Below, piece by piece: positions 34,511 through 37,500 of a stretch of 64,000 nucleotides of DNA; the stretch's first letter is position 1; each line of letters starts with the position of its first letter. The translations under genes were made by a program, and so were the position numbers. Origin of the DNA: Guillardia theta CCMP2712 (Eukaryota; Protista; Cryptophyta); contig NW_005434626.1 in NCBI RefSeq assembly GCF_000315625.1, positions 135,448 through 199,447 on the forward strand, in the 5' to 3' direction. The notes under the pieces were generated by a model. That model saw nothing but the letters and a program-made list of their open reading frames with translations. It did no database searches and was not told where the DNA came from.

Positions 34511-37500
34511 ATGTCGTGCCGATGGTGTGGTGTCGACGTCAAGAGGTTGCTGTACATGGTCGTCTTGTTCGGTCCTCTTCTGCAAGCTCCGTCGCTGGCA
34601 GATATTTCTTTGAAAGGCGATACCTTCGGCCAAGCATGTTTGCCCATCCAACGCGCCGGATGGAGCTCGGGAGGTTTACACAGCATTGCAAGAGACCAAG
34701 GCGAAGTGATCCGCAAATTACCCAATAGCGACGAGACTTTCATCCTCGACTTTGGGAAGAACAAAGGGAAGAAGCTGACAGAAGTGTCCAAAGAATACAT
34801 CTCATGGTTGGTCAACCAGCAAGTGTACAAGAGCAGACCCGCGCTTCATGCTGCTCTGCTGTCCATGCAGATCTTCAGCAAGACCTCACAGTCCTCGTCA
34901 GTGGACAAGCCTAAGGAGGACAAGGGCCATATCAAGGGCCACCAGCACAAGGAATCCTGCAAAGCGAGCTTCCATGATCGGGAAGTACTTGCTAATATGC
35001 CTGGCCTGGATGTCCCACATGCTCTTATCGCTCACCTTCCGTCTGCTCAAGGCTCTGCGTCATTGGCCAGTGACACGACAGTCGAAGTTGGTGACGGCGA
35101 GCACGAGGAGGATCAAGCTGATGCCCCTGACGTCCCGTCGAACTCGCCTGACCCGTTCAAGACCGTCAAGAATAGCGAAAAAGCGAGAGAGGAGGCAGAG
35201 ACAGGGGTTGCTTGCAGCCATGGCAGCAAGATCAAAGTTGAGAGAGCATGGAAGGCAGCGCACTCGCACGTGTCGGGCTGAGGAAGACGACCATCACTTC
35301 CTTCTTCCAACGAACGGGCAAAGTCGAGGGCCTGACGGGCGTCTTCTCGTTCTCGCACACTGAGAATCCTGCGACACCTTCGCCGAAGAAGATAAGGAGA
35401 AGCAATCTTTTGCGAGATGAGCTCAGGTGCGAGACGGGGCAGGGGGAGGATGGGGAAATGAAGAGCGGCAGGGGGAGGGGCAGGGGGAGGGGCAGGGGGG
35501 AGGGGCAGGGGGGAGGGGCGTCGTTTTCATGTGCTTAGGTTCACTTCTAGTTGGATCCGATCGACTCTTCCTCCTCACCTCCGCAACTCTTCTCTCGCTC
35601 CCTCCATCGTCTCAAGATTCGTGCGGCCGCTGCCCTGCGGGTCGGCGACGTACAACGAGCGACTTACGGCTGAACTTGAACTCATCGACTCGTTGGGTTT
35701 CGAAGAATGCTTCCTGCAGGTGAAGTGTAGGGAGGGAGGAAGAGAAGTAGGAGTAGGAGTAGTGGTAGGTACAGGAGAAGGAGGAGCAGGAGGAGCAGAA
35801 GCAGAAGCAGGAGTAGCAATGGGAGGAGGAGGAGGAGGGGGAGGAGGAGAAGCAGGAGGAGGTGGAGGAGCAGGAGCAGGAGCAGGAGCAGGAGCAGGAG
35901 GAGGTGGAGGAGCAGGAGCAGGAGCAGGAGCAGGAGCAGGAGCAGGAGCAGGAGCAGGAGCAGGAGCAGGAGCAGGAGCAGGAGCAGGAGCAGGAGCAGG
36001 AGCAGGAGCAGGAGCAGGAGGAGTAAGACCAGGAGCAGGAGCAGATAGTGTAAGACAGGAGCAGGACAGAGGGAACCAGTGAAAGCTGACATGATGGCGG
36101 CAGGTCCTGAAGTTGCTCGAACTTGCTGAGGGGATGCCTTACATAGTCAGAGGGTCTGCTGCCGGATCTCTCGTGTGCTACATGCTCGGAATTACTCACA
36201 TCGACCCTGTACAAGACTTCTCTCGCTCTTCACTCCTCTCTCCTCTCCTCTCTCCTCTCTCCTTTCTTCCCCCTTCTCTCCCTCTTCTCTTTTCCTTCTC
36301 CCCCCCTTCTCTCCCCCTTCTCTTCACAATCTTGTAGGTCAAAGAGAAAATGTCGCTCAGTCGCTTCATGAACGCGTTGAGAAAAGATCTGCCAGACATT
36401 GACATTGACTTCCCTCACAACGAGGTTCGTCACGCCTCAGCTTCTCTTCGTCCTCGAGCTTCTCACTCCTCCTCCTCCTCCTCGTCCTCCTCCTCCTCCC
36501 TCCCTTTCATCCTCCCTCCCTTTCATCCTCAACCGCTCGTCTGTGCTTTCATCATCCCCCTTTACGTTTCCTTATTTCCTCTTTCTTTCCTCTTCTTTCC
36601 TCCTCCTTCATTTTCCTCGTCTGCATCATCCCTTTCCTTGTTCGTTTCCTCTTGACAACTTCATAGAGAGACAAAATCTTCGAGAGGATTTTCCGTCTTT
36701 TCCCCTCTCAGTCTGCGAGGATTTCAAACCATGTCAAGTTTCGAGAGCGATCGGCCAAACTTGAGTCTGCCAGAAGACTTTCACTACAGTGAGTGACTCC
36801 GTCCCCCGTCCCCCGTCCCCCGTCCCCCGTCCTCCGTCCCCCGTCCTTGCTCATTCCTTCTGCTTCCTCCTGCTGCCCGTGTTTCTCTCACGACCTTGGC
36901 AGCTGCAGGATACCCAGGGGGGTCAGCCCGGGCGAGTTCTTTCAAGGCCCCGTCAAGCTTCGCTACCAGGAGCTGGCCAGCAGCCTCGTCGGTCGCTTCC
37001 GCTGCTACTCTCTGCACTGCGGGGGCCTCGTCATCCTCGATGGGGGAAAGTCGCACGTGCCGGAGGAGCAGCTGGTGAAGGAGACGCGGGAAAGGCCGGG
37101 AGAGCGAAAGTTTCTTGACAACCAGGTCAAGTGGGACAAGAGAGATTGTCAAGAGCGCAAACTTTTCAAACTTGACATCTTGTCAAACCGCGGGCTGTCG
37201 CACTTGTGGAGCATCTCAAGGAAGCATGTGTACGAGTATCCAGCGGACGACCAGCAGACGGCGAAGCTCTTGCAGGAGGGCGACGTGATAGGAGTCATCT
37301 TCTGCGAAAGCCCGGTGAGACAAGCTTCTTCCTCCTCTACCACATCTGTTTACTTACTTGCTCCTCCTCCACCACCTCTTTCCTTCTCTTCGTTGTCTTC
37401 CTTCTCCCTCTCTGGCGTCCAGGCCATGAAGAAAGTTTTGCGCATTCTCGCTCCCTCAAACAGACGAGAGCTTGCGCTCGCTCTCGGTCTCGTCCGACCA

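What the first reader, a model, noticed from the sequence alone, without database searches (positions are those of the whole stretch)
34511..35426. DnaE N-terminus has a signal-peptide-like leader, a PIP-box-like motif and an NLS-like motif: candidate nucleomorph or PCNA-coupled polymerase
Seen: the leader MSCRWCGVDVKRLLYMVVLFGPLLQAPSLA/D has a hydrophobic core and no Phe after the putative cleavage site. Removing a phase-0 GT-AG intron at 35237-35286 gives KIKTTITSFFQR and then TPSPKKIRR, in frame with the polymerase core. Established: the PIP box is Qxx[ILM]xxFF, with Lys-initiated variants in Pol kappa. In cryptophytes a signal peptide without +1 Phe routes proteins to the periplastid compartment, and nucleomorph genomes lack DNA polymerase genes. 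Some cryptophyte plastids (e.g. Rhodomonas salina) carry a laterally acquired dnaX. Inference: a bacterial polymerase re-wired from the beta-clamp to eukaryotic PCNA, acting in the nucleomorph or nucleus, or alternatively in the plastid. Caveat: the segment after the signal is not a typical transit peptide.
Basis: partly seen in the sequence, partly recalled or inferred. Interest (0 to 1): 0.85.

Follow-up and report, generated by a model that had tools for sequence, protein, structure and literature searches.

The report
Intron-bearing bacterial-type polymerase with PCNA motif
The cryptophyte alga Guillardia theta expresses a nuclear, intron-containing, shortened bacterial/viral-type (family C) DNA polymerase whose added N-terminus carries a conserved signal-peptide-like leader, a PCNA-binding-type motif and a nuclear-localisation-type motif, so it is a candidate for the still unidentified polymerase of the alga's relict second nucleus.

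Summary
The window is Guillardia theta CCMP2712 nuclear scaffold JH993012.1; it is not human.

**Confirmed.** The leader, KTTITSFF and TPSPKKIRR lie in one 883-aa ORF with a polymerase core (P0146). A transcript contig from a JGI/IMG sample supports this ORF.

**Wrong.** The proposed 50-nt intron (35237-35286) is retained in the mRNA. Its residues (AWKAAHSHV) are conserved in orthologues. The frame is kept because the transcript has GGGG where the genome has GGG, at 35275-35277 and again at 37584-37586. This is why the genome annotation splits the gene.

**The gene.**
- It has 14 exons and 13 GT-AG introns.
- It encodes a DnaE-like protein with no PHP and no HhH/beta-binding domain.
- The catalytic Asp triad is intact.

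**Relatives.**
- The nearest relatives are 540-900-aa "short DnaE" proteins of phages and giant viruses.
- Giant-virus copies begin with a canonical PIP box (M.Q..LD.FF).
- Cryptophyte-type orthologues conserve [KR]TT[IM]Tx[FY]F, TPSP[KR][KR], an ExoX-like_C domain, and the hydrophobic leader ending PSLA with no aromatic residue at +1.

**Best reading.** A foreign family-C polymerase routed through the ER into the periplastid compartment and nucleomorph and tethered to PCNA. Targeting and PCNA binding are inferred, not shown.

This is not the cyanobacterial plastid DnaE reported in 2026.

The parts
34387..34510 (+). 5' UTR as far as the transcript contig reaches. It holds a 15-codon uORF (ATG 34453, stop 34498-34500) and an out-of-frame ATG at 34504, 7 nt before the main ATG.
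   Evidence: L001 aligns from window 34387; sequence read; ORF list.
34511..34600 (+). Signal-peptide-like leader, residues 1-30: basic n-region, core LLYMVVLFGPLL, c-region QAPSLA, then D at +1. Met16 (34556) is the next in-frame start and still keeps the hydrophobic core.
   Evidence: Most hydrophobic 11-mer of the protein (KD 2.27). Conserved in Hanusia phi (LLCAVLFFGLQIASPSLA|EISL) and in L013 (MLRILAAVAIMTAQIPSLA|LPG). Helix 10-23 in the AF2 model.
34703..34870 (+). Small alpha/beta domain (residues 65-120) containing an ExoX-like_C / QSregVF_b (DUF3820-type) motif, FILDFGKNKGKKLTEVSKEYISWLV.
   Evidence: PF20600 E=0.001 and PF12843 E=0.012, both below Pfam cut-offs. The same weak hits appear in two orthologues, and a clear hit (E=8.7e-11) appears in the related L017 domain. 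pLDDT is 52-79 here. Strongly conserved in Hanusia, L013 and L014.
35237..35286 (+). It is retained in the mRNA and is coding (VERAWKAAHSHVSGLRK).
   Evidence: Collinear transcript alignment; residues conserved in orthologues.
35275..35277 (+). G-run that is GGG in the window but GGGG in the transcript. In the genome sequence as given it ends the ORF at TGA 35279-35281, which gives the annotated 256-aa model P0145.
   Evidence: annotation split seen.
35284..35307 (+). PIP-box-like motif K259-TTITSFF-266. It sits in a conserved island, AW..A..HV..LR.TT[IM]T..F.RTG.....TG (35246-35340), inside an otherwise disordered, poorly conserved region.
   Evidence: Invariant columns in A2. pLDDT is below 50 for residues 253-293. 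Giant-virus homologues have Qxx[ILM]xx[FYW][FYW] at residues 3-13, just upstream of the core.
35374..35400 (+). TPSPKKIRR: a basic K-K-x-R patch (classical monopartite NLS pattern) preceded by SP-x-K (proline-directed/CDK-type site pattern).
   Evidence: TPSP invariant and [KR][KR].R conserved (TPSPRRTR) in L012, L013, L014, L015 and L016. The function is inferred from the pattern only.
35427..35550 (+). Intron 1 (124 nt, GT-AG). The transcript uses the acceptor at 35550, so SWIRSTLPPHLRNSSLAPSIVS is coding.
   Evidence: The orthologues read RDELSWIRS without interruption.
35551..38780 (+). Exons 2-14 of the polymerase core: 35551-35719, 36104-36208, 36338-36424, 36667-36788, 36903-37314, 37423-37509, 37550-37632, 37803-37925, 37971-38033, 38091-38202, 38321-38426, 38470-38532, 38579-38780 (includes the stop). 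Introns are 40-384 nt, all GT-AG. Catalytic Asp: D417 36395-36397, D419 36401-36403, D558 37174-37176. A beta-rich (OB-like) C-terminal domain is at 38513-38777.
   Evidence: Spliced alignment; exon model reproduces P0146. Pfam. PDIDIDF and KLDILS align with M. tuberculosis DnaE1 PDIDIDF and KMDFLG. AF2 model with Foldseek hits to Pol III alpha and PolC.
37584..37586 (+). Second G-run that is GGG in the window but GGGG in the transcript (exon 8). It would frameshift the core at residue 646 if the genome sequence were correct.

Best explanation
This is a real, expressed, intron-containing nuclear gene of Guillardia theta. It encodes an 883-aa 'short' family-C DNA polymerase.

**What the protein contains**
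- Palm, thumb and fingers, plus a small beta-rich C-terminal domain.
- All three catalytic aspartates.
- No PHP/proofreading-docking domain and no HhH/beta-clamp-binding domain.

**Likely origin (inferred)**
- The core belongs to a clade otherwise seen in tailed phages, giant viruses (Nucleocytoviricota MAGs) and one bacterial-looking contig.
- It was therefore most likely acquired by horizontal transfer and then domesticated. It gained 13 spliceosomal introns and sits among ordinary host genes.

**Proposed mechanism, all steps inferred**
1. The conserved N-terminal signal peptide takes the protein into the ER lumen, which in cryptophytes is continuous with the outermost plastid membrane.
2. 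Because no aromatic residue follows the conserved PSLA cleavage-type site, the protein is retained in the periplastid compartment rather than passed into the stroma.
3. The conserved TPSP-KKxR patch drives import into the nucleomorph, possibly gated by proline-directed phosphorylation.
4. The conserved [KR]TT[IM]Tx[FY]F motif, in a disordered linker just upstream of the core, docks the polymerase on a eukaryotic-type PCNA ring. This replaces the lost bacterial clamp-binding module.
5. There the enzyme synthesises DNA without an intrinsic proofreader. That suits a repair or auxiliary replication role, or replication with a separate exonuclease.

The ExoX-like_C domain probably serves as a protein-docking module; its function is unknown.

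**Shown:** gene structure, expression, domain content, catalytic residues, motif conservation, and the PIP boxes of giant-virus relatives.

**Inferred:** every targeting step, PCNA binding, polymerase activity, and the direction and source of the transfer.
For: **Identity and expression**
- Scaffold JH993012.1 of GCA_000315625.1.
- Spliced transcript L001 and MMETSP ORF P0146. The exon model reproduces P0146.
- Neighbouring genes are ordinary eukaryotic genes.

**Family**
- PF07733 and PF17657 pass their cut-offs; there is no PHP, HHH_6 or OB Pfam hit.
- The Asp triad aligns with solved DnaE structures.
- AF2 pLDDT is mostly above 80-90 (block means) for residues 300-883. Foldseek top hits are Taq, M. 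tuberculosis and E. coli Pol III alpha, and PolC.
- Short relatives score E 1e-109 to 1e-76; full-length DnaE scores no better than 1e-43. The short clade separates from full-length DnaE with SH-aLRT 100.

**Contexts of relatives**
- NCLDV capsid; Evr1_Alr with RNase HII; RNA_pol_N; GVMAG contigs.
- A T4-like phage.

**PIP motif**
- A canonical N-terminal PIP box occurs in 9 of 25 rows of the giant-virus clade and in 6 of 6 loci from the giant-virus/IMG-VR scan (three named GVMAG). It occurs in none of the phage-type rows.
- The [KR]TT[IM]T.[FY]F island is invariant across three eukaryote-type lineages while flanking sequence is not alignable.
- The motif lies in a low-pLDDT linker.

**Leader**
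- It is the top hydropathy window.
- The core and PSLA are conserved in Hanusia phi and L013. The +1 residue is D, E or L.
- Both possible start Mets keep the hydrophobic core.

**Need and precedent**
- No cryptophyte nucleomorph DNA polymerase has been identified (PMC5443833).
- G. theta's plastid and mitochondrial polymerases are already assigned to cryptoPolA and POP1 (PMC10877234).
- The chlorarachniophyte nucleomorph uses a giant-virus-related PolB (PMC5635652).
Against: - No localisation predictor (SignalP, ASAFind) and no experiment was available. The leader call rests on hydropathy, the -3/-1 rule by eye, and conservation.
- The region after the leader is not transit-peptide-like: net charge is about zero and it contains acidic residues.
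- G. theta and Hanusia have F/Y at +7 to +9. G. theta cryptoPolA, with F at +5, went to the plastid in diatoms, so stromal targeting is not excluded.
- Position 1 of the motif is K/R rather than the canonical Q.
- The loose PIP pattern alone has about an 11% chance of occurring.
- That the G. theta nucleomorph encodes its own PCNA is only my recollection. I could not verify it.
- POP2 has already been proposed as a nucleomorph polymerase in G. theta.
- The tree does not place the G. theta lineage inside the giant-virus clade. Joining them costs 9.15 lnL and is merely not rejected (AU p=0.186).
- Two uORF-type ATGs precede the start.
- The reference genome carries two frameshifts relative to the mRNA.
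Confidence: 0.5

Rival explanations
1. Host-nuclear enzyme. The PIP-like box and the NLS-like patch take the polymerase to the host nucleus, where it works with host PCNA, for example in repair or translesion-type synthesis. The hydrophobic N-terminus would be non-functional, bypassed by alternative initiation, or used for dual targeting.
For: The PIP-like and NLS-like motifs are typical of nuclear replication and repair proteins and are conserved. uORFs and a weak start context could allow alternative initiation. The post-leader region is not transit-peptide-like.
Against: The hydrophobic core and the PSLA site are conserved in three lineages, which argues for function. The only in-frame Mets upstream of the ExoX-like_C domain (M1, M16) both retain the core. 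The next Met is M119, after that conserved domain.
Confidence: 0.2
2. Plastid-stroma polymerase. A bacterial/phage-type polymerase is imported by a bipartite signal to replicate or repair plastid DNA, as proposed for the cyanobacterial DnaE of Teleaulax.
For: Family-C enzymes act on bacterial-type genomes, and plastid-targeted DnaE exists in related cryptophytes (bioRxiv 10.64898/2026.05.23.727376). An aromatic residue lies at +7 to +9 in G. theta and Hanusia. cryptoPolA, with F at +5, reached the plastid in diatoms.
Against: There is no aromatic residue at +1 in any lineage, and none near the site in L013. The conserved PIP-like and NLS-like motifs have no role in a stroma without PCNA. The beta-clamp-binding domain gives no Pfam hit. 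This gene is a different clade from cyanobacterial DnaE. cryptoPolA already fills the plastid role.
Confidence: 0.12
3. Decaying or non-functional remnant of an endogenous viral or phage insertion. The genome copy would be a frameshifted pseudogene and the motifs would be chance.
For: The reference genome has two frameshifting 1-nt differences in the CDS, and the annotation is split into 256-aa and 589-aa models. Relatives are viral.
Against: The mRNA carries an intact 883-aa ORF. There are 13 canonical introns correctly spliced and host-type neighbours. Orthologues exist in Hanusia and in two environmental lineages, with invariant catalytic and motif residues and one shared intron position.
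Confidence: 0.05

Closest known systems
Bacterial DNA polymerase III alpha subunit (DnaE; solved for T. aquaticus 2hpi, E. coli 2hnh, M. tuberculosis 5lew/7pu7)
   Same: Palm, thumb and fingers fold. PF07733 and PF17657. Catalytic PDIDIDF and K.D.L motifs and the CKSHA motif.
   Different: The N-terminal PHP domain is absent and is replaced by an unrelated ~300-residue module. There is no HHH_6/beta-binding domain and no Pfam OB hit. The gene is eukaryotic, nuclear and interrupted by introns. Sequence scores against full-length DnaE are far weaker than against the short clade.
PHP-less 'short DnaE' proteins of giant-virus MAGs (e.g. GVMAG-M-3300013286-17, P0167, P0004) and of tailed phages (P0158)
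   Same: Same domain content and 33-41% identity over the core. The giant-virus copies have a PIP box immediately N-terminal to the F[VI]RP[LI]P start of the core, the same position as in G. theta.
   Different: Viral copies are intronless and 540-900 aa. They have no signal-peptide-like leader, and no ExoX-like_C hit was found in the few scanned. Their PIP starts with Q at residue 3-6. Phage copies have no PIP. The G. theta lineage is a separate branch whose position is unresolved. I found no paper describing this viral family.
Cyanobacterium-derived DNA Pol III alpha of Teleaulax nucleomorph genomes and red-algal nuclei (bioRxiv 10.64898/2026.05.23.727376)
   Same: A family-C polymerase in cryptophytes (order Pyrenomonadales), proposed to be organelle-targeted.
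   Different: That gene is full length (~4 kb), nucleomorph-encoded, of cyanobacterial descent, carries a plastid transit peptide, and works with beta and tau/gamma subunits. The gene here is short, nucleus-encoded, of the phage/giant-virus clade, and carries PCNA-type and NLS-type motifs. That study's filters (PF17657 E<=1e-40, 800-2500 aa) would not have retained it.
Foreign polymerases recruited to nucleomorphs: giant-virus-related POLD of Bigelowiella natans, chlnmPolA, and G. theta POP2 (PMC5635652, PMC10877234)
   Same: Nucleus-encoded polymerases of non-endosymbiont origin, with N-terminal leaders that send them to the periplastid compartment or nucleomorph.
   Different: Those are family B or family A enzymes with experimental GFP localisation. 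This one is family C and has no localisation data.
PIP-box clients of PCNA (from memory: DNMT1 QTTITSHF, DNA ligase I, Pol kappa KHTLDIFF, Pol iota)
   Same: Pattern x-x-x-[ILM]-x-x-[FY]-[FY] in a disordered segment, followed by basic residues. A Lys at position 1 is known in Y-family polymerases. The TTITS.F string resembles the DNMT1 motif. These comparisons are recalled from memory and were not tested here.
   Different: Position 1 is K/R in all cryptophyte-type copies. Binding is untested.

Membership tests
Family C DNA polymerase (DnaE/PolC) | Pol III alpha NTPase/palm domain (PF07733) above the Pfam gathering score | tested here: met
   132.5 bits against a cut-off of 23.9, E=2.8e-38.
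Family C DNA polymerase (DnaE/PolC) | Fingers domain (PF17657) | tested here: met
   39.9 bits against a cut-off of 22, E=3.6e-10.
Family C DNA polymerase (DnaE/PolC) | Three catalytic aspartates of the palm | tested here: met
   D417 and D419 (PDIDIDF) and D558 (KLDILS) align with PDIDIDF and KMDFLG of M. tuberculosis DnaE1. D417/D419/D421 are invariant and D558 is nearly invariant across 60 family members.
Family C DNA polymerase (DnaE/PolC) | Overall fold matches solved Pol III alpha / PolC | tested here: met
   Foldseek E=6.6e-22 to 2hpi and 9.2e-22 to 7pu7, prob 1.00. TM-scores are only ~0.4 because the domains absent from this protein, the disordered N-terminus and domain orientation lower them.
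Canonical replicative DnaE (Pol III alpha) | N-terminal PHP domain (PF02811) | tested here: not met
   No PF02811 hit in P0146 or in any short relative. It is present in nearly all full-length hits listed. The N-terminal 300 residues are mostly disordered apart from one small unrelated domain.
Canonical replicative DnaE (Pol III alpha) | HhH / beta-clamp-binding domain (PF14579) and C-terminal OB (PF01336) | tested here: not met
   No Pfam hit for either. A beta-rich C-terminal domain (residues 811-883) is predicted, and its only fold matches are weak ones to OB domains of Lys-tRNA synthetases.
PIP-box (PCNA-interacting peptide) proteins | Motif Q-x-x-[ILM]-x-x-[FY]-[FY] | tested here: inconclusive
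   KTTITSFF, RTTITQYF and RTTMTEYF fit at positions 4, 7 and 8 but have K/R at position 1. Giant-virus homologues have the full canonical motif.
PIP-box (PCNA-interacting peptide) proteins | Motif conserved among orthologues and located in a disordered region | tested here: met
   Invariant columns L257, R258, T260, T261, T263, F266, R268, T269 and G270 lie within non-alignable flanks. pLDDT is below 50 for residues 253-293.
PIP-box (PCNA-interacting peptide) proteins | Physical binding to PCNA | not testable with these tools
   No multimer prediction or binding assay was available.
Cryptophyte periplastid/nucleomorph-targeted proteins (bipartite signal without +1 aromatic; Gould et al. 2006, established knowledge) | N-terminal ER signal peptide | tested here: inconclusive
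   There is a hydrophobic core (KD 2.27, the top window), small residues at -3/-1 (S, A), and conservation in three lineages. No SignalP-type predictor was available.
Cryptophyte periplastid/nucleomorph-targeted proteins (bipartite signal without +1 aromatic; Gould et al. 2006, established knowledge) | No aromatic residue at +1 of the transit-peptide-like part | tested here: met
   +1 is D (G. theta), E (Hanusia phi) and L (L013) after the conserved PSLA. F/Y at +7 to +9 in two of the three keeps some doubt.
Cryptophyte periplastid/nucleomorph-targeted proteins (bipartite signal without +1 aromatic; Gould et al. 2006, established knowledge) | Experimental localisation in the periplastid compartment or nucleomorph | not testable with these tools
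   Needs a GFP fusion or immuno-EM.
Classical monopartite NLS | K-[KR]-x-[KR] basic cluster, conserved | tested here: met
   KKIR in G. theta and RRTR in L012, L013, L014, L015 and L016, each preceded by the invariant TPSP. This is a pattern match only.
Giant-virus-derived host gene | Nested within a Nucleocytoviricota clade in a phylogeny | tested here: inconclusive
   The free tree leaves the G. theta lineage unresolved within the short-DnaE family. Forcing it together with the giant-virus clade is not rejected (delta lnL 9.15, AU p=0.186).

The most novel reading that the evidence does not exclude
A family-C (bacterial-type) DNA polymerase has been re-wired to the eukaryotic sliding clamp. 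Giant viruses would run a PHP-less DnaE on PCNA through an N-terminal PIP box. A cryptophyte lineage would have captured such a gene, added an ER signal peptide and an NLS, and now use it as the long-sought DNA polymerase of the nucleomorph. That would parallel the giant-virus-related PolB of chlorarachniophyte nucleomorphs.
Probability: 0.35. Interest if true: 0.9.

Novelty: new variant of a known kind. Interest (0 to 1): 0.78.

Why it matters
- Family-C polymerases are regarded as bacterial enzymes that work with the beta clamp. A branch with canonical PCNA-interaction motifs in giant viruses, and an intron-bearing, expressed copy in an alga, would show a replicase fold changing its clamp partner across domains of life.
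- Which polymerase copies the cryptophyte nucleomorph genome is an open question (PMC5443833). This gene is a concrete candidate that can be tested with a leader-GFP fusion and a peptide-PCNA assay.
- The public G. theta annotation splits the gene into 256-aa and 589-aa models because of two 1-nt G-run differences. Surveys based on the annotation, including the 2026 DNA Pol III survey of eukaryotes, would not have seen it.

Tried and rejected
- Rejected by the collinear transcript and by conservation of the 'intron' residues.

**My own first acceptor for intron 1 (35616)**
- It also keeps the frame, but I rejected it in favour of 35550, which the transcript uses.

**Is this the cyanobacterial plastid DnaE of the 2026 preprint?**
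- No. It is a different clade with different length and domains. That paper's supplements are not held, so I could not check whether this locus was listed.

**Searches that did not help**
- An exact look-up of P0146 found nothing.
- A GTDB genome scan with the bacterial-looking relative P0157 found nothing. A bacterial host for that subgroup is therefore not established.
- BFVD fold search returned only phage DnaE-like proteins and no named giant-virus isolate.
- Literature searches for giant-virus Pol III alpha found no description.
- Searches for a cryptophyte nucleomorph PCNA gave only chlorarachniophyte data.
- The Curtis et al. 2012 genome paper is not in the library.

**Giant-viral island in the window?**
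- Rejected. The neighbours are a voltage-sensor phosphatase, a kinesin, a Zn2Cys6 protein, a TPR-DnaJ protein and a DEAD-box helicase.

**Safety notes**
- The window is not human.
- No toxin, effector or animal, human or crop virus gene is involved.
- The two breaks were marked with N/X in my scripts.

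
Full report
**Where the window comes from**

- An exact look-up of the 256-aa ORF product places window 34511 on scaffold JH993012.1 of assembly GCA_000315625.1. 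I recognise this accession as Guillardia theta CCMP2712.
- Composition, microsatellite-rich introns and the neighbouring genes are those of a eukaryotic nuclear genome. The neighbours include a voltage-sensor phosphatase-like ORF, a kinesin fragment, a Zn2Cys6 protein, a TPR-DnaJ protein and a DEAD-box helicase.
- The window is not human. No toxin, effector or animal, human or crop virus gene is involved.

**Checking the observation**

- The ORF from ATG 34511 reads MSCRWCGVDVKRLLYMVVLFGPLLQAPSLADISL....
- Pieces of the downstream frames hit the Pol III alpha palm and finger Pfam families.
- A full-database HMMER search with the largest core exon returned an 868-aa protein at 99% identity (P0001). 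Its cluster also holds an MMETSP transcript ORF of 883 aa (P0146) and the 256-aa NCBI model (P0145).
- The contig encoding P0001 (L001, JGI sample 3300017164) aligns to the window as a spliced mRNA.
- Its first block is collinear with window 34387-35426.
- The frame is instead carried across by one extra G. The transcript has GGGG where the window has GGG at 35275-35277.
- A second difference of the same kind lies in exon 8 at 37584-37586. These are the only two differences in about 3.5 kb.
- With both breaks marked by N, my 14-exon model translates to P0146 at 882 of 883 residues, the other being the X at the second break, and ends in a stop.
- All 13 introns are GT-AG and 40-384 nt long. A 50-nt intron was thus plausible for this genome, but it is not what happens here.
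- The public annotation follows the genome sequence. It therefore splits the gene into a 256-aa model and a 589-aa model.
- So the leader, KTTITSFF (35284-35307) and TPSPKKIRR (35374-35400) do sit in one expressed ORF with the polymerase. The splicing claim is wrong.

**What the protein is**

- Pfam finds PF07733 (E=2.8e-38) and PF17657 (E=3.6e-10). It finds no PHP (PF02811), no HHH_6 (PF14579) and no OB (PF01336). Nearly all full-length bacterial hits have these.
- The catalytic motifs PDIDIDF (D417, D419) and KLDILS (D558) align with those of M. tuberculosis DnaE1. They are invariant or nearly so across 60 relatives.
- An AlphaFold2 model built on that alignment is confident from about residue 300 to the end. 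Foldseek matches it to Taq, M. tuberculosis and E. coli Pol III alpha, and to PolC.
- In the model:
  - residues 1-64 are low confidence, with one helix at 10-23;
  - residues 65-120 form a small alpha/beta domain;
  - residues 122-240 and 253-293 are disordered.
- The small domain gives sub-threshold hits to ExoX-like_C and QSregVF_b in G. theta and in two orthologues. A related domain on another contig gives a clear hit.

**Relatives**

- Searching with the full protein shows a sharp gap. Proteins of 560-760 aa that have only the two polymerase Pfam domains score E 1e-109 to 1e-76 at 33-41% identity. Full-length DnaE scores 1e-43 or worse.
- In a tree of 94 proteins the short proteins separate from full-length DnaE with SH-aLRT 100.
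- The genomic contexts of short members are mixed:
  - an NCLDV major capsid protein beside P0150;
  - Evr1_Alr and RNase HII on a 190-kb contig (P0167);
  - RNA_pol_N on a 191-kb contig (P0007);
  - IMG/VR giant-virus MAG contigs named GVMAG;
  - a T4-like myophage with sheath and baseplate genes (P0158);
  - one bacterial-looking contig (P0157) that has no counterpart in GTDB species genomes.
- Some members are fused to a ResIII/DEAD helicase.
- I found no paper describing this family in giant viruses.

**The PIP-like box**

- On its own the loose pattern [QKR]xx[ILM]xx[FY][FY] turns up in about 11% of shuffles of this protein. Comparison gives it weight.
- In the clade that contains the giant-virus contigs, 9 of 25 proteins begin with a canonical PIP box at residues 3-13. 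Examples are MEKPKQKTIIDFF, MNQQKITSFF, MKQATLDSFF and MRQSKLQDFF. Several others have degenerate versions.
- None of the phage-type proteins has one. Those start directly at the F[VI]R.[LI]P core.
- All six loci from the giant-virus/IMG-VR scan (three of them named GVMAG) start M.Q..LD.FFQ.
- In G. theta the motif sits at the same place, about 60 residues upstream of RFVRPLP, in a low-pLDDT linker.
- Orthologues:
  - An environmental orthologue (P0161/L012, also on L013 and L016) reads RRTTITQYF.
  - A third lineage (L014, L015) reads RRTTMTEYF.
  - In both, the motif lies in the island AW..A..HV..LR.TT[IM]T..F.RTG.....TG, while the flanks cannot be aligned.
  - L014 and L015 also appear to have an intron after FLQ|V at the same position as G. 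theta intron 2 (read from the translation). This marks them as orthologous nuclear genes.
- Position 1 is K or R in all cryptophyte-type copies, not Q.

**The NLS-like patch**

- TPSPKKIRR aligns with TPSPRRTR in the other lineages.
- This conserves both a K/R-K/R-x-K/R cluster and an S-P-x-K/R site pattern.
- Function is inferred from the pattern alone.

**The leader**

- Residues 13-23 are the most hydrophobic 11-mer of the whole protein.
- A search with the N-terminal 330 residues found one further protein, a 254-aa fragment labelled Hanusia phi by EukProt. From memory, this is the closest known relative of G. theta. It reads ...SLLCAVLFFGLQIASPSLA|EISLSDYSF... followed by a nearly identical ExoX-like_C domain.
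- In L013 the first Met after an in-frame stop opens MGHLGRMRSAAAMLRILAAVAIMTAQIPSLA|LPGAST.
- A basic n-region, a hydrophobic core and a PSLA c-region are thus conserved in three lineages.
- The residue after PSLA is D, E or L and is never aromatic.
- Both candidate start codons in G. theta (M1, M16) keep the core. The next in-frame Met is at residue 119.
- Caveats:
  - No signal-peptide predictor was available.
  - The following ~45 residues have about zero net charge.
  - G. theta and Hanusia have F/Y at +7 to +9.
  - Two upstream ATGs precede the start: a 15-codon uORF at 34453 and an out-of-frame ATG at 34504.

**Interpretation**

- The combination is hard to read as a plastid-stroma or secreted protein. 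It comprises a conserved ER-type leader with no aromatic +1 residue, a conserved basic patch, and a conserved PCNA-type motif placed where giant-virus homologues carry a canonical PIP box. No PHP or beta-clamp-binding domain was detected.
- In cryptophytes, signal peptide plus transit-like sequence without a +1 aromatic residue is the established rule for retention in the periplastid compartment (Gould et al. 2006; established knowledge). The only DNA there is the nucleomorph.
- The literature states that cryptophyte nucleomorphs encode no DNA polymerase and that the imported enzyme is unidentified (PMC5443833).
- G. theta's plastid and mitochondrial polymerases have been assigned to cryptoPolA and POP1. 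POP2 is a tentative auxiliary nucleomorph enzyme (PMC10877234).
- In chlorarachniophytes the nucleomorph-targeted POLD is related to giant-virus sequences (PMC5635652). That is a direct precedent for a foreign polymerase taking over in a nucleomorph.
- I therefore rank nucleomorph targeting with PCNA tethering first (confidence about 0.5). Next come a host-nuclear role (0.2), a plastid role (0.12) and a decaying remnant (0.05).
- That the G. theta nucleomorph encodes its own PCNA is my recollection only. I could not verify it.

**Origin**

- The G. theta lineage (G. theta plus the L013 orthologue; 100) is a separate branch within the short-DnaE family, and its position is unresolved.
- Forcing it to join the giant-virus clade costs 9.15 log-likelihood units and is not rejected (AU p=0.186).
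- A giant-virus source is suggested by the shared PIP position but is not shown.
- The gene is not part of a viral island.

**Relation to the 2026 preprint**

- bioRxiv 10.64898/2026.05.23.727376 reports full-length, cyanobacterium-derived Pol III alpha genes. They lie in Teleaulax nucleomorph genomes and in archaeplastid nuclei, and they carry plastid transit peptides.
- The gene here differs in clade, length, domain content, coding compartment and motifs.
- That study's filters (PF17657 E<=1e-40, 800-2500 aa) would have excluded it.

**Verdict**

- The intron is wrong.
- The gene is best described as a domesticated short family-C polymerase, not DnaE proper.
- The nucleomorph/PCNA mechanism is a well-motivated but untested inference.

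Noticed in passing
window 35275-35277 and 37584-37586: The only two differences between about 3.5 kb of mRNA and the genome are single extra Gs in GGG runs, 2 of the 30 exact GGG runs in the CDS. Both are needed for the conserved reading frame. Assembly error is most likely. An allelic pseudogene or transcript-level G insertion is not excluded.
   Followed up: partly
window 39573-41794 (minus strand): The 3' part of transcript contig L001 aligns with CT-AC junctions, that is, GT-AG on the minus strand, with 42-46-nt and one 133-nt intron. This indicates a convergent gene whose transcript overlaps the polymerase 3' UTR and was merged with it in the assembly.
   Followed up: partly
window 34453-34510: A 15-codon uORF (ATG 34453, stop 34498) and an out-of-frame ATG at 34504 (74-aa overlapping ORF) lie just before the main ATG 34511. 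This may bear on translational control or start-site choice.
   Followed up: no
proteins P0074, P0021, P0032 (phage/bacterial-type short DnaE): Three of 34 phage-type members end in beta-clamp-motif-like peptides (QLNLF, QLSRF, QLKIPF). None of the giant-virus members does. This hints that the clamp-binding peptide is a swappable terminal module in this family.
   Followed up: no
proteins P0019, P0090, P0056, P0075, P0092, P0130: A subclade of short DnaE proteins is fused to an N-terminal ResIII/DEAD-type helicase (about 900-1040 aa).
   Followed up: partly
L017 447-719 and downstream: A clear ExoX-like_C domain (E=8.7e-11) sits N-terminal to an SNF2-like helicase motif (DEMGLGKT) on an environmental contig. 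The same small domain therefore accompanies other DNA enzymes.
   Followed up: no
window 6513-9473 (+): A long ORF combines CBS, a voltage-sensor-type Ion_trans segment, a dual-specificity phosphatase and a PTEN C2 domain. This is a voltage-sensing-phosphatase-like architecture, with a second phosphatase domain at the C-terminus.
   Followed up: no
window 20709-22004 (+): An ORF with four fungal-type Zn(2)-Cys(6) binuclear cluster domains (E=9.4e-29), unusual outside fungi.
   Followed up: no
window 42038-44596 (+): A DEAD-box helicase with a long RS/RD/KE-rich N-terminal region (splicing-helicase-like), largely a single exon. The polymerase gene, by contrast, has 14 exons.
   Followed up: no
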